The notes beneath the pieces are model-generated. The model was given only the letters and a program-made list of their open reading frames with translations. It had not been told where the DNA came from and searched no databases. A program made the position numbers and the translations under genes. From the IMG/VR virus record IMGVR_UViG_3300042922_000643, positions 124,001 through 188,000 of that record: 64,000 nt of DNA, one strand, 5' to 3'. Of this stretch, positions 11,106 through 32,327 are shown piece by piece (the stretch's first letter is position 1; every line of letters begins with the position of its first letter).

Positions 11106-14100
11106 TTATTCATTGTTCGTCCACGATTCTTCAATATAGGTGTCATTGGAGCCTGAACTTTCTGTCCGCTCTCCTGAGTTAATATAGTAGTCTACACTAC
11201 CTAAGCCTGCTTCTTCATCAAATGGATTTAGACTTTGATTATCGAAGAAGTAGTTGAGCGTCTTTCCTAACGCAGCCGTCCAATCGTCTGCTCCAGCATA
11301 CCCAGCCCCCATGTAGAACTGGTCCATTTTCCCTGGTTTACTGCCCACGACGGAACCAGCGTATCCATTAATCCCAGCGGTAAAATTACGTTGCTGATAT
11401 TTCATTGGCATGATCATAACAGCTTGACGTGCTTTTTTATTCCGAAGGAAGGCCTCAGCCCACGTTGCGGCAATATAACTTACGGCAAGCCCTGCAAGAA
11501 CATCTACAGCAATTAATGGCCCACCAACAAGGAATCCACCGACCTTGAGGAAGTTCATTGCATTCTTTCCTTCACCAAGGTTTTTCACTATGCCTTCTGA
11601 GACAGAGACTAACCCCTTACGACTCACTTTGCCAAGCTTTTTTAATCCCGTTCCTTCGATTGTGGATACTTTACCCTTCATTTTCTCAAGAACCTGACCC
11701 ATTTCCTCAATAACCTTAGCTTCGCTTCGTATAGCCCCAGGCTTTTTGACGTCATCATATTCACGAAGCAGCTCTTTGAACCGACCAAAGTCTGCATCAC
11801 CCTTCTCAGGTGAAAGCATCGAGGCAAGCCTTAACATCGCATTTCCTGTCACCGAACCTGTCCACTGTGCTGCCTTTGATACAGCTGCCGTTCCCATAAT
11901 CTTACTCATGGTTCTTGCAGCAAGGTATTTCCCTAGCACGTAAGAGGATAGGCCAATAGAGGCGGAACAGAACCAAGTTGCACGAGAAATTGTAGACATA
12001 TCGTCAACGACGACGACAGCATCAGGAGTGATCATCGTAATAAATCCTGTCTCTAAGGAGAAGCTGTGAGTCACGTCTTTTACAAGGAACGGACCATTCA
12101 TCTCATGCACAATGTCTGTCATATGACACATATCGTGTGGCTTTACTGATGGGTCACCTAGAACTGTTAGAGTTCCCTTGTACATATCCTTCACGGAGTC
12201 TCTCAGTACACTTTGAGCATAGTAATTGAGCTGCTTATCAATTGTCCAGAAGTCTGGGACCAATGGAGATGGGTCCGTCAGGTTAGTTTCAATAACCTTA
12301 GTCTTCTGTTTATCGTATCTGATATCAAAGTCTGCCTGTTGAAGCAAGCTCTGTTCTCCTGAAGCAGATCTAGCAATGATGTTTGTATAAACACCGTCTT
12401 CAGAAGCTTTTATTTTGTTGCCAATGATATCAGTGATGCTGTTATAAATATGGAACTGCTGGAATGGTTTGCGGACTTCTTTAGTAACAACCCGCTCCCA
12501 GTAGCTATCCAGTTCATTCCAGTTATACAAGCTATCATAACGATAAGCTACACGATAGTATGGTTTCCCGAAGAACAATGTTGATCTGGTTTCAAAAGGA
12601 AGCACGGCTGCAATATAGTCTGGAGATGTGTAAGCCAGTGTCTGGGCAACATCCCAAGTGCTCTGTCCATATAGCTTCATCTCAATGTCCATCTCGTCAC
12701 CACTCCACTGAGGAAGGAAGCCAAAGCCATTCCATTTTACGCCCATAGATGCACCATCTTGATACGTCCACTGGCTAAATGTATTCGCTCCATTACTGGA
12801 ATAGATATTTTGCACAGCTTCACCATATTGTGCATCCGTAATATGCCATCCGAAGATGCTTCCAATCGAAGCGTTGGTTCCTGGAGTCTTTACAGGATTA
12901 CCGAAGTGAAGAATACCTAGCGGATTATCTTTAAAGAATCTGCCGCCCGACTGGTAGTTGATTGCATCTTTGAACCAGTTCCCCTTAGAGGTCATTAACT
13001 TAGCCAGTAAATCACGAGGCTCTGTAAGCTTTTTCATGAAAGCATCGTTAGTCTCATCAGGGTCTGCGCTAATTACATTCGTAAGCTCGATACCATCACC
13101 TTGAGCAATGATCGTAATAAGATCATCAGTATCCATCTCTGTAATTGTTCCATTAAACATGACAGGAAGAGATGTTGCATCTGATCCATAACCCAAGCGC
13201 AGGTGTATACGAGCGCCTGTTTGTAGGAACATTCCATCGACTAGCTCTGTTCTTGCGTTTAGAAGCTCTTGCGTTGGTTGTCCAAAAATGAAGTTATCCC
13301 AGATACTATACTCCCAATCACCATATCGGTCTTCCATACGTCTAGAAGTCAAGTTACTATAGATGTTAGTCATCTTTACAACCGCAGTATCTGCTGCGAT
13401 GTTCCGACTCTTATGGACGTCAATGGAAGTTATAGCATTAAACCCATAGAAGTTGTCCCATAGACGATAGTTAGCCATCCATCGACCTTCATCAATAATA
13501 AACATTTGGAAGGTTGGGAACGCTCTAAGCATTCTTCCTCGTTGATCATACTCGCACATGTCCGTAAACATGTCTCTCCAAGTTTCTTGAGGTGTTTCAT
13601 TGTACTTCAAGTTGTTAATCCCCAGAGCTTTAGCTACAGTAGTATATTCTTGATACACTTGAAGGTCAGACTTTGGTGCTTGCTTTGCTGTTTCTAAAGA
13701 AAGTACTAGTGGGTTCTTATCCAAAACAAGAGGACTTTGAGAGTAAATCTTGTACATCTTCATCAGGATTTCATCACTTATTTTTTCTACCCGTTCATCT
13801 TTTACCCGCTGGTCAATAATGACACTATACTGCTGCTCGAATCGGATGATCTCCTTGATCATGGCTTCACGATCAGTACGGATGAGTGCTACAGCAGTGG
13901 AAGATACATTATTCAGATAGCTGTATACACTGTTATCCAGTTTGGCAGAAGGTGTTGCAAACTTTTTCTCCGTACTATTGTACCGACCTTCAAACCATTT
14001 TTCGATGACTGGAACATAGTACTCACTCTTGAGCTTTCTTTCCTTAAAGTTCTTTGGCTTGTTGTATGCAACGACAGCCCATTCCCATGTTCTAGAACGA

Positions 14101-17100
14101 ACTTGGATATCATCAGACTCATTCATCTTCTTGAGCTGGGCTTTAAAGATAGTTGCCATACGACGGATATTAAATTTCCAATCCCATGTTAACCGTCTCG
14201 CCTCAGACACGCTATAGGCATGGACAATCAAAGTGATCTGGCCAATACCTGCGGCAGCTTGTTTTCTCTGAGAAGAAGATTCGCCAGGATAGAGCTTGGC
14301 TGTATATCCGTTAGCTCCATGATAGAGTTGTTCCCATCCGCTTTCTTGACTAAGCAAGGACTTCAGGATGTTGGCAGCCCGTTCTCGCGTAATCATTCCT
14401 TTAGTAGCGTTCAAGTCGGAGTAAGGAATAGAACCAATAGAAATACTTGGAGCATTCTTCCATTTAGGATCACCAGAATGTTTCAGCCATAGATAAGATG
14501 CTTTCGCGTAATCATCCATGCTGGCATAGGTTAATTTTTCTTTGACCACCTTGCTTGAACTTTTTCGCTCATCGAATACAAAGCCAGCAAACAGCTCATC
14601 TATAATGGCATAAATCTCTTTATAAACTTCAAGCTTCGTTGGATTAACAAGGAACTGCTGAAGTGTTACACCACTAACTCCTGTCCAAGCATCAATTTCT
14701 GTCTGGGTTGGGAACGCAGTAACATTGCTGAAGTTCTCCATCCAGGAGTCCACAGACTGTCCTGAAGACTGTAGTGTCTTGCCAACGCCACCCCAGTTCG
14801 TTGTTGGCTCCGAGCCTTCTTCTGTCGAAAACGCAGTTCTAGCTGTTTCACTGCTGTCTTGGTTAGACATGAAAGACACTTTAGTTAGTTCAGTGCTTGC
14901 ATTACGAGCAGCCTCTGTATCTTGAGCGAGCTTATTAAACATAGCCATATTTGCATCGTCGGCATCAAAAATATTTTCGCTATCGAGCTTCGTAGTAGCT
15001 ACGAAACCAGAGTAGTCCTGTATTCTTGTCAGTCCAATCTCTGTTTCTGTTCCTGTCTCTTTTTCATACTTGTACTGTTTTAAATAGTTTCGATATGTCC
15101 ACGATGTGGAGATATAAAAGTCAGGGTCTACATATTTTGCGCCTGACGGATTGTGATAAGCGCGAATGCCCGCTTTAATATAACCGAGTGCGTTGTTTAA
15201 CTCTTGGTATGTAGGAAGTTCCAAGTCAGGATAAAGTTCAAGATCTTTCATCTTACGTTCAACAACGATAGGATCTCTACCTTCTACTGTAGAGACATGT
15301 CTCTCTTCGATCTTTGTAGAATCTGTTGCTGCAAATCCATCCAGAGTTTCTGATCTTTTTTGTGTCTTGTCAAATCCACAAAGAGTCATTTCAATCTGGA
15401 AACGGTTAGGGAATCCAGGCACAGTCCGAGTAACACAAGATTCGATCATCACGCTATTAACACCAAACAGGCGGGTCAGCTGATTCTCAAATCCAACGAA
15501 GCCTGAGGAGATTCCTAGTCTATATTTCTTAGAGTAATAATCAGACTTTTCGATAAGCTCTCGAATAGAACGGATAGCGTTACGATCATCGGTTTCCATC
15601 GTCACTTGAATATAAGGATCTTGTGATCCCATGTATTGATAAGTTGGGTGGTCCCCCATCTGAGTTGATACTTGAGCGAAGTTGTTTTCGTATGTCACAT
15701 TCATTGAAGTAATCAATACATTATCCACGTAGTAATCTTCCATGATAATAGTGCCTTCGCTTGAATTTGCTTTCTCTTGCAACTTTTGATAATTCACATT
15801 GTATGCCGTCTTCTGGAAATTTGCTTGGATCTCAGACTTATTGATCGTAACTAAATAACCCAAGTGTGTAGTATTGTTTGGGTCAAACGCATATAGATCT
15901 TGATTCTTATTATTCATAGCGACATCAGTTATAAGTAGCTTCTTTGGTATCTTAGCCCTATTGGTTTCGGCGCTTACCCGAAGAACAATCAGATCTGTAG
16001 TTCTGGATATCAATCCGAATGTACATTCCATAGGCAAGTAGAACGCATCGCTATTTGCTAAAGAGAAATTCTTTCCATAGATAGCCTCATAAACATCCTT
16101 ATTCAAAGTAGGACTGAATTTTGACGGAAAGTCTTTGCCTTTTCTGACTCTAAGAGAAGCACATCTATTCAGTTGATCAAGCGCTTGAGATACACGTTCT
16201 CCATCAATAGCCATACGGCCTAACAGGTTCTTACCATCAGCGTATTCGGTATTGAACTCGGAAGCACTGGATAGAAAGCGCAGTTCTTTGACAGAGTCCT
16301 GACGCTCAGCCAGATCGCTCTCACTTGCAATCGTAAAGTGAAAATCGTTTGTGAGTTCGCCTTCAATAGGAGCCAGATAGGATCTGTACGGATTCTTCTG
16401 ATCTCTCATTGTTTGTTGATAGTACCAACGAAACATTGGATAGTTAATTTGCTGATCAAGGAATTCTACGTGGGGCATATAAGCTTCATGATCGAACTGA
16501 GCTAGAATGAGGGTAGCCGCAATAGAATGAGGGAATCCTGGGACTGTAGCTACATTTAGGTTCACCAAAATGACATCATGAATATTCATAACTTCATTGA
16601 TGTATTCATTCTCGATAGGAAGAAAAGGCGCTTTTTTGAACTGAGCAATCAATGAACGAAGACCATCCATGTAATAGTACCCACCATCAGCCATCTTCAC
16701 AGGGTAACCGTTGATGGATTCAAGATCATGGAAATACAGCTGTAAGCTAATTGTCTGATGAGAAGATCCAGCCTTAACCATCATCGAAGACTTGGTACGG
16801 AGAGTTTTCACTTTCTCGATACTAGAGGTCGTATTCACTTGAATAGATAGCGGCGGAATAATAAACTGCACATCCCCAATACGCATATGATAAGGAGATG
16901 TCATAGATCTGCGATCATCCATACCTGAAAAGAAGTTCAGTGTATTATCCTGGATAGCTTCTGCGCCAACAACGAACTCATTTTGTTTCTGAGCTTCGGT
17001 AAGCTTAACTACAATAGGAACAACGATGCTTGTGATAGAAGGGTACAAAACGAAGTTGCCATTTTCATCAGGCAAAAGATTATTCGCACTAATCAGCGTA

Positions 17101-18335
17101 TTCTTATCGACTTCGTACCCTTTGCCAGCGAACTCTTTAACAATAGAAGATAGAGTATCTCCCTTTTTAATAATATAAGTATGAGTTGTTTTTGTTGTCA
17201 GCTCGTTGTCATAGCGCATCCGAGCAAGTTCTTCTTGAATCTTTTTTTCGGCAGCGACCTTTAGAGCTTCGTCTTCAGCCTGAATAGCCTGGACCTTATC
17301 GCTGGAGTCATAGCCTTCAACGTATTCCCAGTTAATCGTATCAAACTTTGTGTTGTTATTCTGATACTGATATGTTGCCGATGGGAAACCAAGAGGCACA
17401 TGTCTTTCTTTGCCTTGGTCATCAAAGTAAGTAAACTGCGTAGAGCTTGCAAGCAAACTTTTATTCGCATTGATGTACCATTCGCTGTCAGATAAAGCTT
17501 CGTCAGCCAGAGCATATACTGTCTTATAGACAACACCCATCCAACGGCTACCTGTTCCGTCTTTTGCGGGTGCATTATTCTTTACATCAATATCAACAAT
17601 AACTGTGCCTCCAGCAATGCTTAAGATATCGACAGTTGCTTGTTTGCCTAGCGCACCAATTTGATAGGTGGTATCCATATCGATCTTGTATTTTCTAGAG
17701 ATCTCATTATTCCGATTATCTGCATCCTCAGAAACAGAACCGTTAATGTTCTTAAGTGTCTCAGCAGTATCTACTCCTGCATAACGAATACGAATAGTTT
17801 TTCCTTCATCAAAATCATCGTATGTATTTAGGCTGTTCCCACGGCGAGATATTAAGACATCAATAGTATCTCCGTCGATAACTGTTCCTTTACCGACAAC
17901 TAACCAAGAACGGTCACCAGGGAGATGCTCCCAGACCAGGTCATATTTATTACCAAAGTAAAAAGTCTTTGTCCGTTCCTTACCGAGGTTCACGCTGTTG
18001 ATATCATACTTAGAAGGATTTAGCTCTTTCAAGATAAGATTATACGCTTGAATAGAGAGGTCAAGGCTGGAGACATTAATTCTCCCGCCCTCTGTCTCTT
18101 TAGTGTATTTCAGGTAAAAGTCTTCATCATATGTGACGCCGCTGTTCCATTTCCAGTCACTGTTCGCAGCTTCAAGCATGGCAATGACCTCAACCAAACG
18201 AGCACCTACAAAGGAAGCTACCTTATTATCTTTCCATATTGTCAATTCAGCTTTACCATCAGGAGTCAGGAAGCTCGCTTCCCAACTCTTACTATATGGA
18301 TTTCTATGTACCCGTGCTGCGTTTACTGAGATCAT
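11106..18335 (-). CDS. 2409-aa baseplate hub fusion: SNase fold + LysM + two tube-like repeats + lytic transglycosylase + gp27/GpD-like hub + hydrophobic C-terminus
   Basis: VIDGDT/RYAGVDTAE (SNase); YIIKKGDTLSSI (LysM); TVPGFP twice; LLSQESGW...AGIGQI...AVVAYN (SLT); IHLRLGYG...FNGTITE...GDPSVKPHD...VKDVTHSF (hub). Confidence 0.8.
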   Translation of the reverse strand: MISVNAARVHRNPYSKSWEASFLTPDGKAELTIWKDNKVASFVGARLVEVIAMLEAANSDWKWNSGVTYDEDFYLKYTKETEGGRINVSSLDLSIQAYNLILKELNPSKYDINSVNLGKERTKTFYFGNKYDLVWEHLPGDRSWLVVGKGTVIDGDTIDVLISRRGNSLNTYDDFDEGKTIRIRYAGVDTAETLKNINGSVSEDADNRNNEISRKYKIDMDTTYQIGALGKQATVDILSIAGGTVIVDIDVKNNAPAKDGTGSRWMGVVYKTVYALADEALSDSEWYINANKSLLASSTQFTYFDDQGKERHVPLGFPSATYQYQNNNTKFDTINWEYVEGYDSSDKVQAIQAEDEALKVAAEKKIQEELARMRYDNELTTKTTHTYIIKKGDTLSSIVKEFAGKGYEVDKNTLISANNLLPDENGNFVLYPSITSIVVPIVVKLTEAQKQNEFVVGAEAIQDNTLNFFSGMDDRRSMTSPYHMRIGDVQFIIPPLSIQVNTTSSIEKVKTLRTKSSMMVKAGSSHQTISLQLYFHDLESINGYPVKMADGGYYYMDGLRSLIAQFKKAPFLPIENEYINEVMNIHDVILVNLNVATVPGFPHSIAATLILAQFDHEAYMPHVEFLDQQINYPMFRWYYQQTMRDQKNPYRSYLAPIEGELTNDFHFTIASESDLAERQDSVKELRFLSSASEFNTEYADGKNLLGRMAIDGERVSQALDQLNRCASLRVRKGKDFPSKFSPTLNKDVYEAIYGKNFSLANSDAFYLPMECTFGLISRTTDLIVLRVSAETNRAKIPKKLLITDVAMNNKNQDLYAFDPNNTTHLGYLVTINKSEIQANFQKTAYNVNYQKLQEKANSSEGTIIMEDYYVDNVLITSMNVTYENNFAQVSTQMGDHPTYQYMGSQDPYIQVTMETDDRNAIRSIRELIEKSDYYSKKYRLGISSGFVGFENQLTRLFGVNSVMIESCVTRTVPGFPNRFQIEMTLCGFDKTQKRSETLDGFAATDSTKIEERHVSTVEGRDPIVVERKMKDLELYPDLELPTYQELNNALGYIKAGIRAYHNPSGAKYVDPDFYISTSWTYRNYLKQYKYEKETGTETEIGLTRIQDYSGFVATTKLDSENIFDADDANMAMFNKLAQDTEAARNASTELTKVSFMSNQDSSETARTAFSTEEGSEPTTNWGGVGKTLQSSGQSVDSWMENFSNVTAFPTQTEIDAWTGVSGVTLQQFLVNPTKLEVYKEIYAIIDELFAGFVFDERKSSSKVVKEKLTYASMDDYAKASYLWLKHSGDPKWKNAPSISIGSIPYSDLNATKGMITRERAANILKSLLSQESGWEQLYHGANGYTAKLYPGESSSQRKQAAAGIGQITLIVHAYSVSEARRLTWDWKFNIRRMATIFKAQLKKMNESDDIQVRSRTWEWAVVAYNKPKNFKERKLKSEYYVPVIEKWFEGRYNSTEKKFATPSAKLDNSVYSYLNNVSSTAVALIRTDREAMIKEIIRFEQQYSVIIDQRVKDERVEKISDEILMKMYKIYSQSPLVLDKNPLVLSLETAKQAPKSDLQVYQEYTTVAKALGINNLKYNETPQETWRDMFTDMCEYDQRGRMLRAFPTFQMFIIDEGRWMANYRLWDNFYGFNAITSIDVHKSRNIAADTAVVKMTNIYSNLTSRRMEDRYGDWEYSIWDNFIFGQPTQELLNARTELVDGMFLQTGARIHLRLGYGSDATSLPVMFNGTITEMDTDDLITIIAQGDGIELTNVISADPDETNDAFMKKLTEPRDLLAKLMTSKGNWFKDAINYQSGGRFFKDNPLGILHFGNPVKTPGTNASIGSIFGWHITDAQYGEAVQNIYSSNGANTFSQWTYQDGASMGVKWNGFGFLPQWSGDEMDIEMKLYGQSTWDVAQTLAYTSPDYIAAVLPFETRSTLFFGKPYYRVAYRYDSLYNWNELDSYWERVVTKEVRKPFQQFHIYNSITDIIGNKIKASEDGVYTNIIARSASGEQSLLQQADFDIRYDKQKTKVIETNLTDPSPLVPDFWTIDKQLNYYAQSVLRDSVKDMYKGTLTVLGDPSVKPHDMCHMTDIVHEMNGPFLVKDVTHSFSLETGFITMITPDAVVVVDDMSTISRATWFCSASIGLSSYVLGKYLAARTMSKIMGTAAVSKAAQWTGSVTGNAMLRLASMLSPEKGDADFGRFKELLREYDDVKKPGAIRSEAKVIEEMGQVLEKMKGKVSTIEGTGLKKLGKVSRKGLVSVSEGIVKNLGEGKNAMNFLKVGGFLVGGPLIAVDVLAGLAVSYIAATWAEAFLRNKKARQAVMIMPMKYQQRNFTAGINGYAGSVVGSKPGKMDQFYMGAGYAGADDWTAALGKTLNYFFDNQSLNPFDEEAGLGSVDYYINSGERTESSGSNDTYIEESWTNNE

Positions 18336-18349
18336 CCGCTCTACTCCTC

Positions 18350-21300
18350 CTATGAGATGATACGACCTCCGCTAATCGCTTGGGATACAATCCCTTGTAG
18401 CCATTGCTGATCTAGGTTCGTCGTATTATCTTGTACATTCATATTCATGTTTAACTGCATTGGCATCATAGCGTTAAGTTCTCCATGCACCAGTGCAGCG
18501 ATTTGTTGTTCACTCATCGTGGAGGCCTGCTTGCTGTTAATCGAGATATTAATGTGTTCTCCATCCTCGTTCGGTGTAACTCGTGCAGTAGGAGATTTAT
18601 CAAGCATTCCCATCGCAGAACCGCGAGGCATAGACTCTTCAATAACTCCATCCTTACCTCGAACTGTTTCTTCAGGAGTAGGACCACCTCTAGTGATTGC
18701 ACTAGCAGCCCAAAGCCCTCCGAAGACTAAACCAGCAGCTCTGATTGTGCCAAACCCTGCCGAACCTCCACCGCCAAAGCCTGCGGCAAATCTGTCAGCT
18801 AACTCCCGTACTTTTTCCCCAGAATTTTTAGCGGTAGTAGCTCCGCCTAGTAGTTCCTCGCTAAGAGGTGTTGCCTGAGATTCACGAAGTAGACTACCCA
18901 TATTTGGCTCTTCCAAGTTAGATGCTAAAGCCTTACTAGAGTATGATAAGGGTTTTTCTAGTGATTCCGCAATACGAGGATCAAAATTAATTAAATGTTG
19001 CATACCAGGTGTTTCTAAAATTGAAGTTCCTTTGCCTCGCAGCATGTTACTCAAGTCTTCTGGGGATTTGATCCCTTCAGAAACGAATAGTTTATCGGAT
19101 ACGTCATTGAAGAGTCCGCGGCTTCTTCCTGTATACTGCCCTGTCTTTTGCAGGCTATCAAGCATGTGTTCAAATTCAAATGGTTGAGCGTCAGTTGGAG
19201 TGAAGCCAGCGCCTGAAGCAGTATCGAAAATTCCAAGCACGGAGTTTGCTTTACGGATACGCTCAATACCATCACCATCAGGACGATTGATACCGCCTTT
19301 CAGGTCTTCTAAGGCAGCATCCCGTTGGATGAGGTTTGTTCGTGCATATTCCTGAGCAGCTTCAAGTGTTGCGCCTTCGTTATTCGCAATATAGCTCTGT
19401 ACGAAGTCCTCTATCTTGAATTTTTTGGAAGAGATTGCTTTCTGGGAAACGGCTCGACCAAAGTCATCCAAGTGACTTCTCATTGTTGATAGTTCAGCAG
19501 AGCGCTCTTCGGTTAGCATTCCGCCAGACTTGAGTGTCTCTTTAACCCCGTAAATCAAACTCGAAAGCTTATAACGAGTATTATCGAGGACCCCTACATC
19601 CGCTTTACCTAAACGTGCGATAGCTGTTTCAGCATCTTGAAGCGGACCGACTTTAGGTGCCCATTGCTCGTGGAATTCTTTACGGAACTCTGCACTTCTC
19701 CACAGCTCTTGAACTGTTACCCCTTGGGCCGATGCCTTGCTCTCGATATCTGAGCGAACTTCTTTAGCGACAGCTTCAAATTCTGGCAACGATCCTTGAT
19801 GGATTTTAGCCATAGCTTGATGAACTTCTGCGCCCTCTTGGTATTTATAATGAGCAAGCACATTAGAGATAAAGTCACCATCATAGTCGGCATTTAGAGA
19901 AGTTGCTGTACCAACAGTGAATAGTCCTGTTCGTGCGTTCGCTTTTGTCAGTTCGTTTGAGACCTCAACCTTAAGTACAGCGTTCGTACTTTCATGGATC
20001 GTTGGATAACGGTTTACAAATCCATATAAACCCTTCTCTTTGATTTCCGCAAGTGCTGCTTCGCGCATGAACATATTCTTCGGGATACGATCACTTGTCT
20101 TAAGATTCTTATTGGCTTCTTTCCATTCTGTAGAAAGTACATTATGTCTCTCTGCATTAGTAGCTCTTAGAACCTTGTCTTCAGCGCCATCGATCATTTC
20201 CAGCATCCGCTGTTCGCTAACGTACAGGGAACCTTCTTTAAAGTTTCCACTCGCTAGAGGATTCACAGTCTGAGCACGAAACCGACCTGACATGTCCTGC
20301 TGAGATGTTAAGAGCTTCTTCGCGATACTACCTTTAGATGAAGTGATCTCATATCGAACCTGCTCATCATAATTACTAATTGCATTACGAAGGGCTGTCT
20401 CTGTTTCAGGTGTCTGAGCTGCCTGATACTCTTTCGATTTTGATGCAATCTTAATTTGCGCTTTCTGAAGATCAGTAAGTACTGCCATACTCTCATCGGC
20501 ATTAATAGGCACACTAGCGATATGAGAATCAAAGAAACGAACATATTTTCTACCGAAGTTGTCCCCTGGCAATTCGAAGAGCGCTGTTCCACCATTTTGA
20601 CGGATAGCGTCACTCATCTTTTTACCAGTTGCTTTGCCGTTCTCAAAGAGTTCGACATGCTCTCCGCCCATTTGAATTACGGTATTACTATAATCTCCAA
20701 CAGTCCGCGTTTGTCCTTTGTAACCTGACTGTGGAGGGTCAGTGAAAGTGTGTGCGGATATTTCAGTGATACCGTTATTAATACGGCCTGCACGGATACC
20801 GTCTCTATCATTGATATGGAAAGAATCACCACGTGTACGAATAACAACTTCGCCCTCACGCAAGATCCCCTTTTGCTGAAGGTCAGTATCTGTTAAGTCT
20901 AAGGAAGCACTAATGAGATTACGAGCATATCCATCGATGTCTCTGTTCTGCGCACGAGCAGCTGCACTTACATGTTTATTTACCCATGAAGAGACAGCAT
21001 TCCCTTCGCCTAAGAAACGGTCTGCGCGATCACTGATTGCTCCTGTTTCTTTAATCCCCCAGCTAACAAGACCATCAATGCTTTCAACTTTTTTCATCCG
21101 TCCCGTACGAGGATCAAAACGTCCCTCGAAGGTAGCGCCCATTGAGTTTTCCCAGTTATAGACATCTGCGTTACCAAATGATTCCTGTCCATATTCAATG
21201 GTATTCTTGAGGAAGCCACCAGCACCAATCCATTTGTTCTCTTCTTTGTCAAACTCAGAAAGGAAGTTTTGGACACTCTGAAGATTGAATGAGCCCTGGG

Positions 21301-25618: not shown

Positions 25619-25632
25619 CGCTACATTCCCCT

Positions 25633-28600
25633 TTATCCAAATATTGAACCCATGTTATTGTTAAACTCCGAGACGATTTCATCTCTACGGTCTTTGATAA
25701 AGTCCATTGCAAGACTTATCTTATTCTCACCCTGTAAAGGTGAAGTCGTCATACTCACCTGCGCATCCTTAAGCCCTGCGCCTTGAAGAATCTTTTCGAT
25801 TCTAGTGATATCAATCGACATGCTAGGGCGGAATGGTTCAATTCGATTAACCCCAGAAGAGTCTGCATTCTTTACATCATCCTGCCACATTCCAAACTCT
25901 GTCAGTTCTAGACCTTCGTTTCGAACGACTTTAAGTTTGATATCGTCAAGATTGACATTGGCATCCCAGCCCTCCCACTTTGCATTAGGGAGATAGTGAT
26001 CCTTAAAGTACGAGTTTAAGCTCTCAGGCTCGTCTGTGTCCATACCCCATTTTGCTTGGTAGAACCGACGCTGATTCTTAGGAACCAACCGAAGAATTTC
26101 TTCTCTTTCTTTCGGAGCCGCAGTCATAAATTGAGTAAAGAATTCACGGTCCTTACTAGGAAGAGCTCGGAAGATCTTTGTCATGTCTCCATTCGGATCT
26201 GCCCCGTATAGTGTGGACTCATACTGCTCTTTATATTGCAGAGCTTGCATCGTCTTCGAACCGATACGGTAAGAACCGCGGTCTTGATCGATCATCTTGA
26301 GTCGGCTACGAACATTATCTAACTGTTCCTCGACTACGTCCTCGTCAACATAACCTATCTTCTTCGCCATGGAAAGCCATTTTTTCGAAGCATCCAGATA
26401 ATTACGAAGTTTTTTATTCTTTTGACCGCGGTCACCGCTGTCTCCGACAAGTTGATCGACGTCGATCCCCTCTTCGTCCTTAGCTCGCTCAGCAGCTCTC
26501 TCGTAGAGACCTTTATACTTCATGTATTTCAGAACATCGAAATACTCATTAATAGCACGTTCTTTTTCTCTTCGCTTAGGAATCCAGGCGTAGTCATCTC
26601 CACCAGGAGAACGACGACCTACAAATTCGTCGATGCTACGTGCAGCCGCGAGTCCACCAAAGACAGCAGCTCCAACCCACTTACCATAATACTTACCTGC
26701 GCCCTTCTTACCAAAGAGCCATCCAATACCATAGCCTTGTGCTGCACCAACCAGAGGATTCTGAGAGGCTGCGGTTTCCAACATCGGCTGAATCCATCCA
26801 CCCCAAGGATCTGTCCAAGGTCTCCAAGCTTTACCATAGACTTCATTCTTCTTGTACATTTCAAGTGGTGAACGAACCTGCATAAACTTGTCTGCAATTA
26901 CCCCAACGATTGGGATCTTCGGAATAGCATCATGAGTCATCCATTCCATCATGCGGCCTACGGTGACCTGCGTCTTGTCATACATAGCGATAGTGCCTAC
27001 ACCCGTATTTTCACCTGAAGCATTTACGCCGTCTTTCTTATCAAACTTACGAGCCAGCATTGCATTAACGGATTGCCCTTTGGTACTCATATAGAAAGGA
27101 TTGTGGTCATTGCCGTTACTATATACAACAGCGTGCATCGTGTTCATCGTATCGTCACGGACTCTATTGATTGGGTCAGCGTCTACACCAATCGTAATTT
27201 TAGCGCCCTCGTAGATATACTGCTGGAGCCATTCTTTCGCCTTCTCTGCATCCGCTTTTACCTTAACACCTGCAAGACGAATTGGATTGTTTGGATGTTC
27301 CGCAGTTAAGAAAGTATTCGCATCAAGAACCTTAGTAACAGTCACTTTCTGGTTATCGACTTCTGCATTGCGGAATTTGTTTGGATAGAAGTGGTATTTA
27401 TCTTTCTTAGCAGCCACTTGATCACGGACTTCTGCGTATTCATCTTCCATGCCCGTAGTCAGTGCGCCTGCTTCTTTCATCTGAGAAACCATTCGACGCC
27501 AGTATTTATATTCATCAGAGTAAGGTGCAACGTCAGCCAGGATCTTGAATCGATCAAATGCACCATAGTCTCCAAAGGTGTCAGGATGGAGCTTGTTAAG
27601 GCTCTCATACGCAGCGCCAGGAAGTCTCATTTCACCCTTAGCAACTTTAGTATATGGGTCTCCATGTTGGAAATCGATGAAGTAGTTAACGCCTGGCAAC
27701 CAATCAGGCATCTTATTTTGCAGAGGATTGTAATACTGTTTACGTGGATCTTTTGCTAGATAACGACGAGCAATTTCTGAGAACTCGCCGCCGAAGAATC
27801 CATCGGCACCGCCCATTTCCATATCCCAGAAGGAACGGCCATAACTCATCATACGGCTGGAGCGGTCTAACTTCTGACTCCGAATATTCGTATCTATTCC
27901 CATTGCCATATTTGCAGAGAAACCATAGATACCCGCTTGTTCTGTAAGGCCGTACCACATGTCTCCAAGGACCTGTGAGCCGCTGTACGGGCTTCCAATG
28001 TCCTTAAGGTCTGCTACAAAGTCTGGGTCACGAAGCGACTCCAGGCTGCTCATAGGGCGTGCTGGGAGCAACATACCGCCACCAGGTCCTACACCAGCAC
28101 CAGCGCCTGTTCCTCCAGCACCAGCAGCAACTATACCTGCGTTGATAGATCCGAGATTGTCCATAGCCAAAGCACCTGTAGTATAAGCGCCTGAGCTACT
28201 AGGACCACTTTTCCCATACCGAGTTAGCTGCGGAAGAGAAGGAGCATCTAATGAAGAAAGACCTTCACCAAAACCACCTCCGAAGGAGGAAGACTCAGAT
28301 AGCAGGTTGTATCCACCCGCAGGCATGAACTGAATAACGCCTTCACCTGTCGCGCTATCATACTGAGAAGTAATGTAATCATTAACTTCTTTCTGGTACT
28401 CACGGTGAGCCTTCGACAGGTCTTTGTTTTCACGATATGGATTGAGTAGACCACCAACTGTTCGATTTAGAGCAGGCCCAATAAGCGGGATCATTCCCAG
28501 CTCTTGAATGCCTCCACTAATTGGATAAGGGCGATCTTCAGCATGCTTTTTCTCATAGTGATCTGGATCAGTCAAGAAGTGCTTAATTGGAGCAAACGGA

Positions 28601-31600
28601 TGAGTAAGAGTAGGCATCCAACTATTAGCCCAGTACTCACTCTCACTACCGTACATTGTGTCTGTGAACTTATAATCAGACTTCATGCGGCGATACCAGT
28701 TAGGCTGGAAGCGGTCTATCTTTCCGCCTTCCCAAGGGGTTGTTGAGCCTATTCCCCACCAGCGGCCTTTGCGGACAGCGTCTTCTCCGCTTTCATAGTA
28801 ATGACGAAGTTCATCCTCACTACGAGTGTCCCCAAAGAATCCAAATGATCCATACTTAACAGCAGCACCAATAGGTGTTTTCCATAGCTGATCTAAGCCA
28901 GGTATCAATTCTGCGAACTCTTTACCGATCTGATTAATGCCAGTAAACTGTTTAAACCATGCAGTATCCAAAGACATGTTCGCATATGTATCCGCGGCTT
29001 TGTCACTGACTCTATCACCAGTCATACCGTCCAGGTGTTGCAACTGCTGAAGAGCAACATATGGAAGAACAATTCGCCGTCCAAACTGGTTGGTTATGAT
29101 ACTCTGCATCGATCCTCTATTTTTTTGAGAGAGACCAAGACCGATCTTCGCCAGGGAGTTGTCCAGACGTTCTGCAAAGTAGTACGGAATCATAGATGCC
29201 ATAGTAAAGTCTTGAATATTTTTGCGGCCTGCAAATGGTTGACCTAGAACCTTCATAGCAGAACTTGTTGATGCTTTTAGAGGACTTACTCCGTCTGTAA
29301 TTTGACGATTAATGTCTTCAAGCATCCAGTTCTTACCTCGGCCTTTATTCATGACGAGGTTACCGACTAAACCAAAAGGCTGTGGAGGTTGATCGCCAGG
29401 GCCCATGGACCATATTGGTGTGTAGTTTGTTACGGTATTAGAAAGAACTTCTCTGAAATCATCACGACGTATTAGATCGCCCTTAAAAGCTTCTAATGCT
29501 TCAGTCTTAGCTTGCGGACCTAAACGATAAACATCGTCCCAGTAGCGGTGTAACTCGTTAAGGACAGACAAATCCCCAACTTCTCTTGCTGCTTTCTCAG
29601 GAAGATTACCGTTCTTGATTCCTTCGCGAACGAGATCTGCTACAGAAACCTGAGCAGTTTGCTCGATCTGTTCAATAGCGTGCTGATGGATTAAGCGTTT
29701 AACATCGTCAATTCTATTTACTATATTAGTTTCGTGTACGTCTAAAGGCTGTAGAGGTCCCATGAGGTAAGGAGCATTGTCAGAGACAATACGCTTACCC
29801 TTTAGAAATTCCCCTTGGTTGTTGTGGTACTTCTCCCAAGTCTCGCTGACCTGACTGCCTACTTTACGCATGGCAATCCGACCATTCTTTTCACTCATAC
29901 CCGCACGAATACGGCCTAGAGACCCCATAATATCATCAGGCCCAAATAAGTTTCCTAGATCGATATTCGACTCTCCGTACGCTTGCTTCGCATAACTATT
30001 TAAGAAGTTTGCAGTATCATCGGACAAGGGCTTTGCTCTGGAGTTAATTTCTGCGTAGATATCCTTGTAAGAAGATTCTAAATCTTTGATCGTTGCATCA
30101 TCTTTAAAAATTGTTTTGTAGCGGTTACGCATCCAGTTTGGATCATCAAACTTGGTGAATGTGCTTAATGCTCGACTAAGAATAGTTTCAGACTCTTGTC
30201 CGCCGATATCAAATAATCGTTTAATGAATCCGCGATTAGCTCCAGCGCCCGTATGTAAGTTTGCAATGGAAGACATTGCTCTTGGAATAGCACCGAATCT
30301 AGCAGAGGCCAGCGTTACATTATCCTTAACAATTTCACCACTAACCAAATCCATAACTTTATTATTAGAGTACAGATAGTCTCGGCTCAGTACACCTACG
30401 GCAGCGTCTTGATTATGAGCCCGTGGATGTCTTAAGGTTTCGGCCACCCCATGTAAAGAAGGCTGGATAGTTCCTCGTTGCATCAAGTATGTTTTTGGAG
30501 CTTCTTTCATTGCTTCGTATGTGGTCCAGTGTGCAAGATCCAATGGGTTAAATCTCAGGAAAGGGACTTGGAAGTTTTGTTGAACGAACGAAGCAGACTT
30601 ATATAGACCTTCATGGAGACTTCTAGTATCTACGATATGTCCCGCATCATTAATGAATATACGGTGGTCTGCAACAAGATCAAGGAATCTGCTGTCTTTA
30701 TTGGCCATTGCAGCGATTTTATTACCTATACGGCCATTGACAGCCTCACCATTAATACGGCGGCGAATGACAGAGTCATTATCAAAGAGCTTATTGACCC
30801 ATTTTCCTGATTCATTCTTCTCTAGTAAATCTTTATTTACAACGGGACGGTATCCTGCACCACCCATCATTTTCGTAAGGAATGTTTCTTTCTTTTGATG
30901 GCGAGAAACAAAGTCATCAATGAGCTTGTTTTTCAGATTAACACTGCCCTGTACAGGAACACCATCAATAGATCCAGGCCGTTTTGCACCTCGAAGAACA
31001 CGACGGTCTAGTCGTCTAGCATCTGCTCTTTTTTGGAGAGTAGTGAACATTCCCTCAACAAATTCTTTACGAGCTGTCTCATCAGGAAGTTCTATCGAGA
31101 ATGCATTGTTATTCTTAACTTTATTTTCAGGACTGTATCTCTTCAACATATTCTCAATTCGTTCTACTCCAGGGTTCAGGAAGAAGTCCGAATCTTGAGC
31201 GTGAAGGTCATTAAGAATTTCACCAAGTCCTCTTTCAAAATGCTGAGGGAATTTGGTCTTGAGATCATTCATTGCCAACGTCTTTTGAGTAGAACGAATA
31301 TAACTTCGGCCTGTCGAAGAGAGATCAGTAATCAGCTGGCTATAATCTGTTTCAATATTAGTAGGCATACCGCCTAGTATACTTTGTTGTCTACGTATAG
31401 CTGTTTCGGTACTTCGAGATAAAGAGGATTCTAATCGCTGATTAAACCTCTCTGGGTTTAAAAAATGAGATACAGGGGAGCGTCGGTCTAAAGCATGATC
31501 AAGTGCTTTGATACCTGACATTGCATCCCCGATGAGGCCACCTATCTTAGGGGCCTGGTGAAGGTATGAAGCCGTTCTAAGAGCTGCACCCCCAACGATA

Positions 31601-31758
31601 CGGCCTGCGTCTCCAAGCGTCTCAGACGCCATCCTACGAGTTGCTGGGGACAGTGCGAGGGTGGCAGCAGCGCCAAGTGCAGCAATACCCCAGACCCCGT
31701 GATGAGTCTCTTGTTCTTTCTCACTATTCAGGTATCTTGAGTATTGGTTATCCGCCAC
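25633..31758 (-). CDS. 2041-aa tape-measure-like protein with a degenerate SNase-fold domain
   Basis: First gene after the tail chaperones; helical with Gly-rich hydrophobic segments at both ends; VTKVLDANTF...IRLAGVK...VNAMLARK at about 27040-27350. Confidence 0.6.
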   Translation of the reverse strand: MADNQYSRYLNSEKEQETHHGVWGIAALGAAATLALSPATRRMASETLGDAGRIVGGAALRTASYLHQAPKIGGLIGDAMSGIKALDHALDRRSPVSHFLNPERFNQRLESSLSRSTETAIRRQQSILGGMPTNIETDYSQLITDLSSTGRSYIRSTQKTLAMNDLKTKFPQHFERGLGEILNDLHAQDSDFFLNPGVERIENMLKRYSPENKVKNNNAFSIELPDETARKEFVEGMFTTLQKRADARRLDRRVLRGAKRPGSIDGVPVQGSVNLKNKLIDDFVSRHQKKETFLTKMMGGAGYRPVVNKDLLEKNESGKWVNKLFDNDSVIRRRINGEAVNGRIGNKIAAMANKDSRFLDLVADHRIFINDAGHIVDTRSLHEGLYKSASFVQQNFQVPFLRFNPLDLAHWTTYEAMKEAPKTYLMQRGTIQPSLHGVAETLRHPRAHNQDAAVGVLSRDYLYSNNKVMDLVSGEIVKDNVTLASARFGAIPRAMSSIANLHTGAGANRGFIKRLFDIGGQESETILSRALSTFTKFDDPNWMRNRYKTIFKDDATIKDLESSYKDIYAEINSRAKPLSDDTANFLNSYAKQAYGESNIDLGNLFGPDDIMGSLGRIRAGMSEKNGRIAMRKVGSQVSETWEKYHNNQGEFLKGKRIVSDNAPYLMGPLQPLDVHETNIVNRIDDVKRLIHQHAIEQIEQTAQVSVADLVREGIKNGNLPEKAAREVGDLSVLNELHRYWDDVYRLGPQAKTEALEAFKGDLIRRDDFREVLSNTVTNYTPIWSMGPGDQPPQPFGLVGNLVMNKGRGKNWMLEDINRQITDGVSPLKASTSSAMKVLGQPFAGRKNIQDFTMASMIPYYFAERLDNSLAKIGLGLSQKNRGSMQSIITNQFGRRIVLPYVALQQLQHLDGMTGDRVSDKAADTYANMSLDTAWFKQFTGINQIGKEFAELIPGLDQLWKTPIGAAVKYGSFGFFGDTRSEDELRHYYESGEDAVRKGRWWGIGSTTPWEGGKIDRFQPNWYRRMKSDYKFTDTMYGSESEYWANSWMPTLTHPFAPIKHFLTDPDHYEKKHAEDRPYPISGGIQELGMIPLIGPALNRTVGGLLNPYRENKDLSKAHREYQKEVNDYITSQYDSATGEGVIQFMPAGGYNLLSESSSFGGGFGEGLSSLDAPSLPQLTRYGKSGPSSSGAYTTGALAMDNLGSINAGIVAAGAGGTGAGAGVGPGGGMLLPARPMSSLESLRDPDFVADLKDIGSPYSGSQVLGDMWYGLTEQAGIYGFSANMAMGIDTNIRSQKLDRSSRMMSYGRSFWDMEMGGADGFFGGEFSEIARRYLAKDPRKQYYNPLQNKMPDWLPGVNYFIDFQHGDPYTKVAKGEMRLPGAAYESLNKLHPDTFGDYGAFDRFKILADVAPYSDEYKYWRRMVSQMKEAGALTTGMEDEYAEVRDQVAAKKDKYHFYPNKFRNAEVDNQKVTVTKVLDANTFLTAEHPNNPIRLAGVKVKADAEKAKEWLQQYIYEGAKITIGVDADPINRVRDDTMNTMHAVVYSNGNDHNPFYMSTKGQSVNAMLARKFDKKDGVNASGENTGVGTIAMYDKTQVTVGRMMEWMTHDAIPKIPIVGVIADKFMQVRSPLEMYKKNEVYGKAWRPWTDPWGGWIQPMLETAASQNPLVGAAQGYGIGWLFGKKGAGKYYGKWVGAAVFGGLAAARSIDEFVGRRSPGGDDYAWIPKRREKERAINEYFDVLKYMKYKGLYERAAERAKDEEGIDVDQLVGDSGDRGQKNKKLRNYLDASKKWLSMAKKIGYVDEDVVEEQLDNVRSRLKMIDQDRGSYRIGSKTMQALQYKEQYESTLYGADPNGDMTKIFRALPSKDREFFTQFMTAAPKEREEILRLVPKNQRRFYQAKWGMDTDEPESLNSYFKDHYLPNAKWEGWDANVNLDDIKLKVVRNEGLELTEFGMWQDDVKNADSSGVNRIEPFRPSMSIDITRIEKILQGAGLKDAQVSMTTSPLQGENKISLAMDFIKDRRDEIVSEFNNNMGSIFG

Positions 31759-32270: not shown

Positions 32271-32283
32271 GGTTTCTCCTCCT

Positions 32284-32317: not shown

Positions 32318-32327
32318 GGGATATGTA

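What the first reader, a model, noticed from the sequence alone, without database searches (positions are those of the whole stretch)
11106..31758. Three-giant cassette (about 6,870 aa): nuclease-fold proteins flanking the RNAP as a possible injected enzyme package
Seen: three consecutive 2.0-2.4k-aa genes replace the usual tape measure plus small hub genes. The 2409-aa protein has an SNase fold with intact DGDT and RYAGVDTAE motifs. The 2041-aa protein has a degenerate one (VLDANT/RLAGVK). All three have Gly-rich hydrophobic helices. Known: crAss-like phages eject three large cargo proteins including their RNAP. Inference: an analogous ejectosome here, combining membrane channel, polymerase and nuclease or DNA-binding modules in a myovirus.
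Basis: partly seen in the sequence, partly recalled or inferred. Interest (0 to 1): 0.65.

Follow-up and report, generated by a model that had tools for sequence, protein, structure and literature searches.

The report
Tail giants carrying a virion RNA polymerase
Three consecutive giant tail genes of a 251-kb soil jumbo phage sit where the tape-measure and baseplate-hub genes normally lie, and the middle one carries a previously unreported exonuclease plus single-chain RNA polymerase, probably delivered into the host through the contractile tail.

Summary
Three back-to-back minus-strand ORFs of 2041, 2422 and 2409 aa fill 11106-31758.

- **Nuclease folds:** the 2409-aa protein has an SNase domain with a full catalytic set. 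The 2041-aa protein has a catalytically dead SNase-derived domain. Both rest on transitive Pfam evidence.
- **RNA polymerase:** the middle protein is a real two-barrel RNAP with beta-like and beta'-like barrels in one chain, fused to a DEDDh exonuclease.
- **Hydrophobic segments:** all three proteins carry Gly-rich hydrophobic segments.

The giants do not replace the tape measure and hub. They are enlarged positional counterparts of Bacillus phage 0305phi8-36 gp145, gp146 ("tape measure") and gp147 (gp27-like hub), and they lie directly after two tail-chaperone paralogues. The better analogue is therefore the tape-measure-fused virion RNAP of Thermus phage P23-45, not crAss capsid cargo.

The trio is widespread. 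Of 76 IMG/VR loci with a gp145-like gene followed by an ORF of at least 600 aa, 47 have D-x-D-G-D in that ORF. The SNase on the hub was already noted in 2007. I found no report of the RNAP/exonuclease in these "tape measures". Virion location and ejection are inferred from relatives and synteny, not shown here.

The parts
25633..31758 (-). Giant 1 (P0001, 2041 aa): gp145-like conserved virion protein of unknown core function, directly after the tail chaperones
   Evidence: ORF. tblastn to 0305phi8-36 ORF145 'virion structural protein', WH1 gp096 and KLEB27-3 gp031-033. 850 relatives. No Pfam, PHROG, NCBIfam or PDB match for the whole protein.
27049..27366 (-). Degenerate SNase-derived (OB-fold) domain of giant 1, aa ~1465-1570; catalytic residues lost (LDANT, RLAGVKVKAD)
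   Evidence: Homologues P0122 and P0125 pass the Pfam SNase cut-off here (26.6 and 21.6 bits against 21). P0122 aligns to P0001. hhalign against the hub SNase is weak (P 0.0024). Atlas score only 0.77.
26644..26757 (-). Gly-zipper-like hydrophobic segment of giant 1 (aa 1668-1705). Further segments lie at 28060-28158 (aa 1201-1233, G/A-rich and uncharged) and 31639-31698 (aa 21-40).
   Evidence: Hydropathy and charge scan. Sequence. Weak Gly-zipper_YMGG hit in homologue P0122.
18350..25618 (-). Giant 2 (P0002, 2422 aa): DEDDh exonuclease plus single-chain beta/beta' two-barrel RNA polymerase plus hydrophobic segment plus conserved C-terminal module; positional counterpart of gp146 'tape measure'
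24419..25441 (-). DEDDh (DnaQ-like) 3'-5' exonuclease domain, aa ~60-400; D97, E99, D272, H348 and D353 are invariant in 40 family members
   Evidence: phrog_192 E 4.6e-9. Family profile against PDB hits exodeoxyribonuclease, PolC exonuclease and ExoI, E 1.8e-4 to 0.02. Invariant columns.
21179..22621 (-). Beta-like half of the RNAP (aa ~1000-1480), with motif G-x-K-x-x-S-x-x-G-x-R-x-T at aa 1325-1337 (window 21608-21646)
   Evidence: K1327 is invariant; G1333, R1335 and T1337 are nearly so. The profile hits RNAP beta 6j9e_C at its GDKMAGRHGNKG motif, E 0.0028.
18929..21181 (-). Beta'-like half of the RNAP (aa ~1480-2230): DMSGRFR (1775-1781), NRYPTIH (1869-1875, window 19994-20014), NADYDGD (1909-1915, window 19874-19894)
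   Evidence: R1870, P1872, D1911, D1913, G1914 and D1915 are invariant in 58 sequences. Profile against PDB: phiKZ gp55 E 9.4e-6, RPA1, AR9 and bacterial beta'. 11 of 58 members hit PF00623. AF2 model pLDDT 88.6. Foldseek top hits are all beta'. VIA Z about 10.
18353..18796 (-). Gly-rich hydrophobic segment (aa ~2275-2310) and conserved C-terminal module (aa 2311-2422) shared with otherwise unrelated 'middle giants'
   Evidence: Invariant P2313, P2315, P2343, A2345, D2397 and N2398. hhalign to the Moorella phage CDS0031 C-terminus gives 96.5%; to the last 90 aa of 0305phi8-36 gp146, P 3.9e-4.
11106..18335 (-). Giant 3 (P0003, 2409 aa): enlarged baseplate hub protein (gp147-like) carrying SNase, LysM and lytic-transglycosylase-like modules and a C-terminal transmembrane-like helix
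   Evidence: phrog_20474 E 1.5e-225. tblastn to 0305phi8-36 ORF147 'baseplate hub protein', ME3 hub and KLEB27-3 'putative baseplate protein'. gp27/gpD homology of gp147 is given in PMC2147016.
17331..17963 (-). SNase (thermonuclease) domain, aa ~125-335, with equivalents of D21, R35, D40, T41, E43 and R87 all present (D156, R184, D189, T190, E192, R264)
17013..17180 (-). LysM peptidoglycan-binding motif, aa 386-441
   Evidence: PF01476 at 22.6 bits against a cut-off of 20.9 when the N-terminal piece is scanned alone. Also.
14016..14378 (-). SLT-like lytic transglycosylase region, aa ~1320-1440 (QESGW at 1330-1334, GIGQI at 1363-1367)
   Evidence: Weak PF01464 hit, E 0.043. Motifs read and located. 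0305phi8-36 gp147 has a transglycosylase domain (PMC2147016).
11946..13268 (-). gp27/gpD-type hub core, aa ~1690-2130
   Evidence: tblastn to the Acinetobacter phage ME3 baseplate hub protein over aa 1690-2130, E 2e-17. Weak YQBQ-like hit. phrog_8809.
11445..11561 (-). Strongly hydrophobic helix of giant 3, aa 2259-2297
   Evidence: Kyte-Doolittle maximum 2.0.
31764..32816 (-). [quoted passage not shown]
   Evidence: Both hit phrog_29362. Syntenic with WH1 'tail chaperonin' gp097/gp098 and 0305phi8-36 ORF143/144 (PMC2147016).
10371..11093 (-). 240-aa peptidase/lysin-like gene directly downstream of the hub giant
   Evidence: phrog_25247 peptidase and phrog_894 endolysin. Weak MepK-like hit. 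Relatives have an LT-like structural protein or an amidase at this position.

Best explanation
The cassette is the central tail-lumen and baseplate-hub module of a 0305phi8-36-type jumbo myovirus, with its three proteins enlarged by enzyme domains.

**Giant 1 (gp145-like)** is a conserved virion protein with Gly-zipper segments and an inactive SNase/OB domain.

**Giant 2** occupies the tape-measure position. It consists of an invariant DEDDh exonuclease, a single-chain beta/beta' two-barrel RNAP, a Gly-rich hydrophobic segment and a conserved C-terminal module.

**Giant 3** is the gp27/gpD-type hub, carrying an apparently active SNase, LysM and a lytic transglycosylase.

**Proposed mechanism (inferred).** On sheath contraction the hub enzymes open the wall, and the nuclease acts at or near the envelope. 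The lumen proteins leave ahead of the DNA and their hydrophobic segments insert into the membrane. The RNAP, the only polymerase of this kind in the genome, then transcribes the first genes as the DNA enters, as proposed for P23-45. A phage sigma factor later redirects the host RNAP.

**What is shown:** domain identities, conserved catalytic residues, synteny and wide distribution.

**What is inferred:** virion location for this phage, ejection, catalytic activity, and which giant sets tail length.
For: **Synteny.** Two sheath paralogues, tube-like genes and two chaperone paralogues lie upstream. A lysin and baseplate wedge genes lie downstream. The same order occurs in KLEB27-3, WH1, 0305phi8-36, Moorella MTATph1 and Acinetobacter ME3.

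**Virion presence in a relative.** gp145 and gp146 of 0305phi8-36 are annotated 'identified as virion protein by mass spectrometry'.

**RNAP.**
- Invariant R-x-P and D-x-D-G-D across 58 diverse members.
- PDB profile hits to phiKZ gp55 (E 9.4e-6), RPA1, AR9 and bacterial beta'.
- Beta-motif hit to 6j9e_C.
- PF00623 in 11 of 58 members.
- AF2 model pLDDT 88.6. Every Foldseek hit shown (about 50 of at least 500 significant matches) is an RNAP beta' chain. VIA Z about 10 to Rpo1N, Rpb1, vaccinia, QDE-1 and AR9.

**Exonuclease.**

**Only RNAP in the genome.** No other large ORF carries D-x-D-G-D, and there is no other PF00623 or PF05183 match. The PF05183 control did not ring, so that negative is weak. 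One sigma-70-like ORF is present.

**C-terminal module** is shared with other middle giants.

**SNase domains.**

**Distribution.** 47 of 76 IMG/VR trios have D-x-D-G-D in the middle giant, against a rough chance expectation of about 0.04 per protein from assumed residue frequencies. Enterococcus and Cytobacillus episome-like contigs have it too.

**Precedent.** TMP-fused virion RNAP of P23-45 (PMC10770324).
Against: - There is no proteomics, structure or expression data for this phage. Only soil DNA runs hold it.
- Giant 2 is almost entirely globular enzyme domains, with no obvious long ruler segment.
- Giant 1, not giant 2, directly follows the chaperones, so the tape-measure role may belong to giant 1 or be shared.
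- The 'tape measure' label for gp146 in 0305phi8-36 rested mainly on a length correlation (PMC2147016).
- The beta-like barrel rests on a single PDB hit at E 0.0028 plus motif spacing.
- The C-terminal similarity to gp146 is weak (probability 36%).
- The complex prediction of the giant 2 C-terminus with the hub core gave no answer.
- No repeated promoter-like motif was found in the genome.
Confidence: 0.68

Rival explanations
1. One reading: the three giants are capsid-packaged cargo, a crAss-like ejectosome stored with the DNA and expelled through the tail. They would not be tail-lumen or hub components.
For: - crAss-like and N4-like phages package giant virion RNAPs fused to large unknown regions (stated in PMC10770324).
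- Folded enzyme domains of this size fit more easily in a capsid than in a tube lumen.
- The RNAP model also resembles phi14:2 gp66 (Z 6.4).
Against: - The genes lie between the tail chaperones and the baseplate wedge, not in the head module.
- Giant 3 is homologous to a gp27/gpD-type hub (PMC2147016).
- Giant 2 shares its C-terminal module with proteins annotated as tape measure.
- The fold is closer to cellular-type beta' (Z about 10) than to gp66.
Confidence: 0.12
2. Giant 1 is the true tape measure, because it is adjacent to the chaperones, has a variable N-terminal 840 aa and has Gly-zipper segments. Giant 2 would then be a separate pilot enzyme protein riding in the tail tip or lumen rather than a ruler.
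For: - Giant 1 directly follows the chaperone pair.
- Its N-terminal about 840 aa are poorly conserved while its C-terminal 1200 aa are conserved.
- It has three hydrophobic or Gly-rich segments.
- Giant 2 is filled with globular domains.
Against: - Hardies et al. assigned the tape measure to gp146 by length correlation (PMC2147016).
- The conservation of giant 1's C-terminal part (up to 77% identity) is atypical for tape measures.
- No data relate tail length to either protein in this clade.
Confidence: 0.3
3. The enzyme-like domains are structural relics or act only outside the cell (wall and extracellular DNA clearance). No polymerase would be delivered, and early transcription would rely on the host RNAP.
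For: - The SNase of giant 1 is clearly degenerate.
- SNase-type enzymes are typically extracellular and Ca-dependent (general knowledge).
- The genome encodes a sigma-like factor.
- 0305phi8-36 manages without an RNAP in gp146.
Against: - Strict invariance of the Asp triad, the R-x-P motif, the beta lysine and the five DEDDh residues across proteins down to 15-20% identity indicates selection for catalysis.
- 0305phi8-36 has a separate YonO-like RNAP, orf99 (PMC2147016), whereas this genome has no other RNAP.
Confidence: 0.08

Closest known systems
Thermus phage P23-45 gp96: tape-measure-fused virion RNAP (PMC10770324)
   Same: - A two-barrel RNAP with D-x-D-G-D lies inside the giant protein encoded at the tape-measure locus.
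- That protein also carries transmembrane segments.
- The proposed role is transcription of the first genes during DNA entry.
- The structural match to the model is Z 7.5.
   Different: - P23-45 is a siphovirus, its RNAP is N-terminal and its protein is 5002 aa with a metallopeptidase.
- Here the phage is a contractile-tailed jumbo phage, the RNAP is in the C-terminal 60% and a DEDDh exonuclease sits at the N-terminus.
- There is no detectable sequence relationship. The fold is closer to cellular-type beta' (Z about 10).
- P23-45 has a second, non-virion RNAP. This genome shows none.
Bacillus phage 0305phi8-36 gp145, gp146 (tape measure) and gp147 (hyperplastic gp27 hub) (PMC2147016)
   Same: - The same three-gene block follows a two-gene chaperone.
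- gp145 and gp147 are sequence homologues of giants 1 and 3.
- gp146 shares the exonuclease-type DIETTG motif and, weakly, the C-terminal module.
- gp145 and gp146 are proven virion proteins.
- An SNase domain on the hub of the BtI1 relative was already noted there.
   Different: - gp146 has no D-x-D-x-D motif and no RNAP similarity.
- That phage has a separate YonO-like RNAP instead.
- gp147 lacks the SNase and carries NlpC/P60 and M23 domains.
crAss-like phage phi14:2 gp66 virion RNAP and crAss cargo proteins
   Same: Giant single-chain two-barrel virion RNAP delivered with the DNA; structural match Z 6.4.
   Different: - crAss RNAP and cargo are capsid-stored, and the phage is podovirus-like (from memory and PMC10770324).
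- Gene context differs.
- gp66 is of the QDE-1/YonO type, whereas this one carries beta and beta' sequence motifs.
phiKZ and AR9 multisubunit virion and non-virion RNAPs
   Same: Jumbo-phage RNAPs of beta/beta' descent. The best sequence-profile hit is phiKZ gp55 (E 9.4e-6), and AR9 beta' is also hit.
   Different: Those are split into 4-5 separate polypeptides, encoded outside the tail module, and packaged in the head. Here a single chain is fused to an exonuclease in the tail module.
Staphylococcal nuclease (SNase, PF00565)
   Same: The hub N-terminal domain keeps DGDT, R-x4-D-T-x-E and G-x-R. Homologous copies pass the Pfam cut-off.
   Different: - It is embedded in a 2409-aa baseplate hub protein.
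- The window copy itself scores below Pfam detection.
- The copy in giant 1 has lost the D21, D40 and E43 equivalents.

Membership tests
Two-barrel (beta/beta'-type) RNA polymerases | Beta'-type double-psi beta-barrel with a metal-binding D-x-D-x-D (NADFDGD-like) and an upstream N-R-x-P-[ST]-x-H motif | tested here: met
   NRYPTIH at 1869-1875 and NADYDGD at 1909-1915. R, P, D, D, G and D are invariant in 58 sequences. PDB profile hits are aligned on this motif. PF00623 in 11 of 58 members.
Two-barrel (beta/beta'-type) RNA polymerases | Second (beta-type) barrel supplying two basic residues 8 apart (GDKxxxRHGxKG) | tested here: inconclusive
   G-x-K1327-x-x-S-x-x-G-x-R1335-x-T has the same spacing. 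K is invariant and R nearly so. There is one PDB hit to RNAP beta at that motif, E 0.0028. This region was not modelled structurally.
Two-barrel (beta/beta'-type) RNA polymerases | Overall fold of the largest-subunit core | tested here: met
   AF2 model of aa 1480-2290: pLDDT 88.6, pTM 0.86. Every Foldseek hit shown (about 50 of at least 500 significant matches) is an RNAP beta' chain, best E 8.9e-7. VIA Z 9-10 with 280-450 aligned residues.
Two-barrel (beta/beta'-type) RNA polymerases | Template-dependent RNA synthesis | not testable with these tools
   Needs a biochemical assay.
Tail tape measure protein | Encoded between the tail chaperone(s) and the baseplate hub; hydrophobic segment(s); C-terminus conserved with other tape measures of the lineage | tested here: met
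   Synteny. Hydrophobic segment. C-terminal module shared with the Moorella middle giant (96.5%) and weakly with gp146. Giant 1, however, lies between the chaperones and giant 2.
Tail tape measure protein | Protein length determines tail length; extended, mostly helical chain in the tube lumen | not testable with these tools
   There are no tail measurements for this uncultured phage. Giant 2 is mostly globular domains, which argues for caution.
DEDDh (DnaQ-like) 3'-5' exonucleases | Exo I (D-x-E), Exo II (D) and Exo III (H-x4-D) motifs | tested here: met
   D97, E99, D272, H348 and D353 are invariant in 40 members. phrog_192 E 4.6e-9. PDB profile hits to exonucleases.
Staphylococcal nuclease family (giant 3 copy) | SNase fold with the Ca-binding and catalytic set (D21, D40, T41, E43, R35, R87) | tested here: met
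   All six equivalents are present. Three of the five aligned N-termini scanned (the window protein plus four homologues) pass Pfam SNase, best E 1.8e-6. Atlas 0.90-0.91. The window copy itself is below the Pfam threshold. The fold was not modelled.
Staphylococcal nuclease family (giant 1 copy) | The same catalytic set | tested here: not met
   Homology to SNase is supported transitively. However, the D21, D40 and E43 equivalents are replaced (LDANT; RLAGVKVKAD), so this is an SNase-derived fold and not a nuclease.
gp27/gpD-type baseplate hub | Homology to the hub core domains; gene located before the baseplate wedge genes | tested here: met
   tblastn to the annotated hub proteins of 0305phi8-36 and ME3. 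The gp27 relationship of gp147 was shown by HMM comparison in PMC2147016. Wedge genes lie downstream. Direct Pfam evidence here is only weak (YQBQ-like, E 0.0096).
crAss-type capsid cargo / ejectosome | Proteins stored in the capsid and ejected through the tail | not testable with these tools
   The gene context argues against a capsid location but does not exclude it.

The most novel reading that the evidence does not exclude
A large, widespread lineage of jumbo myoviruses of Firmicutes and some Gram-negative bacteria delivers a previously unrecognised single-chain beta/beta' RNA polymerase through the contractile tail lumen. The polymerase is fused to a proofreading-type exonuclease and forms part of a three-giant, membrane-inserting tape-measure/hub complex. 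This would make tail-lumen coupling of DNA entry and first transcription a general strategy rather than a peculiarity of P23-45. It would also mean the 'tape measures' annotated in this lineage since 2007 are in most cases enzymes.
Probability: 0.4. Interest if true: 0.75.

Novelty: new variant of a known kind. Interest (0 to 1): 0.62.

Why it matters
- **A new RNAP clade.** It would add a structurally distinct clade of single-chain cellular-type RNAPs: 76 cluster representatives, nearly all 2.2-2.8-kaa giants.
- **A recurring solution.** It would show that fusing a virion RNAP to tail-lumen proteins recurs in contractile-tailed jumbo phages.
- **Annotation.** It corrects the 'tape measure', 'structural protein' and 'hypothetical' labels used across this lineage.
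- **Testable questions.** It makes a long-standing question testable in culturable relatives (KLEB27-3, WH1, Edson): how do non-nucleus-forming jumbo phages start transcription, and how could 270-kDa enzymes pass through a tail tube?
- **Unexplained combination.** An invariant exonuclease next to the polymerase, and an intact SNase on the hub, are unexplained and experimentally tractable.

Tried and rejected
- **Direct family scans.** Pfam, NCBIfam and PDB scans of the three whole proteins gave almost nothing. Single-sequence PDB searches of both SNase regions gave only chance hits. Pfam SNase did not score the window's own copy.
- **Word search.** A search with the isolated SNase domain found no stand-alone relatives. 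tblastn of it against phages found only the hub giants.
- **First RNAP model.** The first AF2 model, from an 8-sequence alignment, was unusable (pLDDT 51.6). The 8-sequence profile found no PDB relatives. Both were solved by the 58-sequence alignment.
- **Giant 1.** Its family profile found no solved structure.
- **SNase-to-SNase comparison.** hhalign of the hub SNase against the giant 1 domain was weak (probability 12%).
- **Complex prediction.** The giant 2 C-terminus with the hub core gave no answer (score 0.01). This is no evidence either way.
- **Promoter search.** A k-mer search for a repeated promoter-like motif found nothing above 7 copies.
- **BpSp rejected as kin.** Bacillus phage vB_BpuM_BpSp was considered and rejected. 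It carries a separate RNAP beta-subunit gene (found in its virions) and a different structural module.
- **Other RNAP families.** The PF05183 and PF00940 searches of the genome are uninformative because their controls did not ring.
- **Read mapping.** Not done, because only soil DNA runs hold the sequence.

Full report
**Source and observation.** The window is bases 124001-188000 of a 251,543-bp IMG/VR virus record rated complete. The sequence occurs only in soil metagenome runs. On the minus strand, three ORFs of 2041, 2422 and 2409 aa occupy 25633-31758, 18350-25618 and 11106-18335, separated by 11-14 nt. I call them P0001, P0002 and P0003; they are transcribed in that order. The stated coordinates are exact.

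**Context.** Upstream lie two sheath paralogues, tube-like genes and two small paralogues that share phrog_29362. Downstream lie a peptidase/lysin-like gene and baseplate wedge genes of the gp25-like and J-like types. The nearest cultured relatives are the Bacillus jumbo myophages vB_BauM_KLEB27-3, vB_BceM_WH1 and Edson. More distant relatives are 0305phi8-36, Moorella phage MTATph1 and Acinetobacter phage ME3.

All of these have the same block: two chaperone genes, a gp145-like giant, a variable middle giant, and a hub giant. In 0305phi8-36 these are ORF145 (virion protein by mass spectrometry), ORF146 ("hypothetical tape measure protein", also found by mass spectrometry) and ORF147 (baseplate hub). 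[quoted passage not shown] So the three giants do not replace the tape measure and hub. They are the enlarged versions of those genes in this lineage.

**Middle giant (P0002).** Whole-protein scans gave only a weak PF00623 hit and phrog_192, a DNA polymerase exonuclease subunit family.

- *Family size.* The word search found 5 relatives. The exhaustive HMMER search found 76 cluster representatives, nearly all of 2.2-2.8 kaa with the match at the same relative position; the remainder are shorter sequences, mostly apparent fragments, and there was no significant match to canonical multisubunit RNAP subunits.
- *Invariant residues.* In a 40-sequence full-length alignment the invariant residues are D97, E99, D272, H348 and D353 (a DEDDh exonuclease); K1327; R1870 and P1872; D1911, D1913, G1914 and D1915; and a few C-terminal positions.
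- *Beta' region.* The beta'-region profile hits phiKZ gp55 (E 9.4e-6), RPA1, AR9 beta' and bacterial beta', all aligned on N-R-x-P-T ... A-D-x-D-G-D. Eleven of 58 members hit PF00623.
- *Beta region.* The upstream profile hits RNAP beta at GDKMAGRHGNKG (E 0.0028). The family motif G-x-K-x-x-S-x-x-G-x-R-x-T has the same 8-residue spacing.
- *Structure.* With the 58-sequence alignment, AlphaFold2 gave pLDDT 88.6 and pTM 0.86 for aa 1480-2290. Every Foldseek match shown (about 50 of at least 500 significant) is an RNAP beta' chain. VIA-align gives Z about 10 to archaeal Rpo1N, Pol I and Pol II, vaccinia, QDE-1, RDR2 and AR9; 7.5 to P23-45 gp96; and 6.4 to crAss phi14:2 gp66.
- *Architecture.* Exonuclease (~60-400), unassigned region (~400-1000), beta-like half (~1000-1480), beta'-like half (~1480-2230), Gly-rich hydrophobic segment (~2275-2310), and a conserved C-terminal module.
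- *Uniqueness in the genome.* It is the only ORF of at least 60 aa with D-x-D-G-D apart from a 93-aa ORF, and the only PF00623 match. One sigma-70-like ORF lies elsewhere in the genome.

**Relation to "tape measures".** 0305phi8-36 gp146 and the transposase-interrupted Moorella gene lack any RNAP signal. They do share the exonuclease: Moorella at 98.3% probability, and gp146 through a DIETTG motif and a weak alignment. They also share the C-terminal module: Moorella at 96.5%, and the last 90 aa of gp146 at P 3.9e-4. This matches the 2007 remark that only the last 60 residues align between such genes.

0305phi8-36 instead has a separate YonO-like RNAP, orf99 (PMC2147016). ME3_36 has a divergent D-H-D-Q-D, and its predicted structure matches my model.

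**Flanking nuclease folds.**

- *P0003.* It carries IDGDT, R-x4-DTAE and G-x-R, which are the equivalents of SNase D21, R35, D40, T41, E43 and R87. The domain is conserved at the N-terminus of the hub giants. Three of the five aligned N-termini scanned (the window protein plus four homologues) match Pfam SNase, best E 1.8e-6. Atlas features agree. The domain is followed by LysM, which is above the cut-off when scanned alone; an SLT-like region; the hub core; and a strong hydrophobic helix. Hardies et al. already noted an SNase domain on the BtI1 hub homologue and found it unexplained.
- *P0001.* It belongs to a large family of 850 hits with no known domain except one. Members P0122 and P0125 pass Pfam SNase in a region that, by direct alignment for P0122, corresponds to aa 1493-1560 of P0001. 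The catalytic residues are replaced throughout the family, so this is an inactive SNase/OB fold.

**Survey.** In 79 IMG/VR loci found with the gp145-like profile, 76 have an ORF of at least 600 aa next downstream, most of 1.9-3.3 kaa. Of these, 47 contain D-x-D-G-D at about 75-82% of their length, against a rough chance expectation of about 0.04 per protein. Thirty match the exonuclease HMM and 36 the C-terminal HMM. The same holds on 205-240-kb contigs in Enterococcus casseliflavus and Cytobacillus oceanisediminis assemblies, whose hubs show canonical DGDT...[VI]D[SA][PA]E.

**Known or new.** The closest precedent is P23-45, whose 5002-aa tape measure has an N-terminal two-barrel virion RNAP that transcribes the pre-early genes (PMC10770324). 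I found no paper or supplement that mentions an RNAP or exonuclease in the 0305phi8-36-type middle giants. The library is incomplete, so this is not proof of absence.

**Verdict.** Virion location, ejection and catalytic activity remain inferences for this uncultured phage.

Noticed in passing
window 41206-42312, 42377-43681 and 34272-34865: Three genes (367, 434 and 194 aa, minus strand) each have an almost full-length open reading frame on the opposite strand (366, 430 and 197 aa). They lie in the head/tube part of the module. This is probably a codon-usage effect in highly expressed structural genes, but it is unusual in extent.
   Followed up: no
G000:C1:218393-218608 (outside the window): A 228-aa ORF matches Sigma70_r2 above the Pfam cut-off. 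This suggests later transcription by host RNAP redirected by a phage sigma factor.
   Followed up: partly
L004 (Moorella phage MTATph1) 12513-19869: The middle giant of this phage is split by a transposase gene into an N-terminal part with the exonuclease and a small C-terminal part that keeps the conserved end module.
   Followed up: partly
P0062, P0110, P0112, P0120 (gp145-like homologues): Some gp145-like proteins are about 400 aa longer and carry a LAGLIDADG_3 (PF14528) hit. This suggests intein or homing-endonuclease insertions in this conserved virion gene. The KLEB27-3 homologue is also split into three ORFs.
   Followed up: no
L015 (CP065512.1, Cytobacillus oceanisediminis, 240,207 bp) and L013 (Enterococcus casseliflavus contig, 205,576 bp): Whole replicon-sized contigs in bacterial genome assemblies carry the same trio. 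Jumbo phages of this lineage therefore seem to persist with, or contaminate, cultured isolates. Enterococcus would be a host genus beyond Bacillus.
   Followed up: partly
window 34877-36484 and 37125-38675; 33664-34221 and 34278-34862: The tail sheath and a tube-like protein (annotated 'major head protein' in PHROGs) each occur as two paralogues, as in KLEB27-3 and 0305phi8-36.
   Followed up: no
window 31522-31758: The start of giant 1 is uncertain. The longest ORF starts at a GTG 5 nt after the upstream stop (2041 aa), while the public collection holds a 1962-aa version from a later start. The N-terminal hydrophobic segment (aa 21-40) exists only in the long form.
   Followed up: partly
BFVD hits: The RNAP model also matches a 'minor tail protein' of an uncultured siphovirus (ctnpt50), a Microcystis phage MaMV-DC protein and a Microbacterium phage Burro protein. 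This hints that tail-protein-embedded two-barrel RNAPs occur in further, unrelated phage groups.
   Followed up: no
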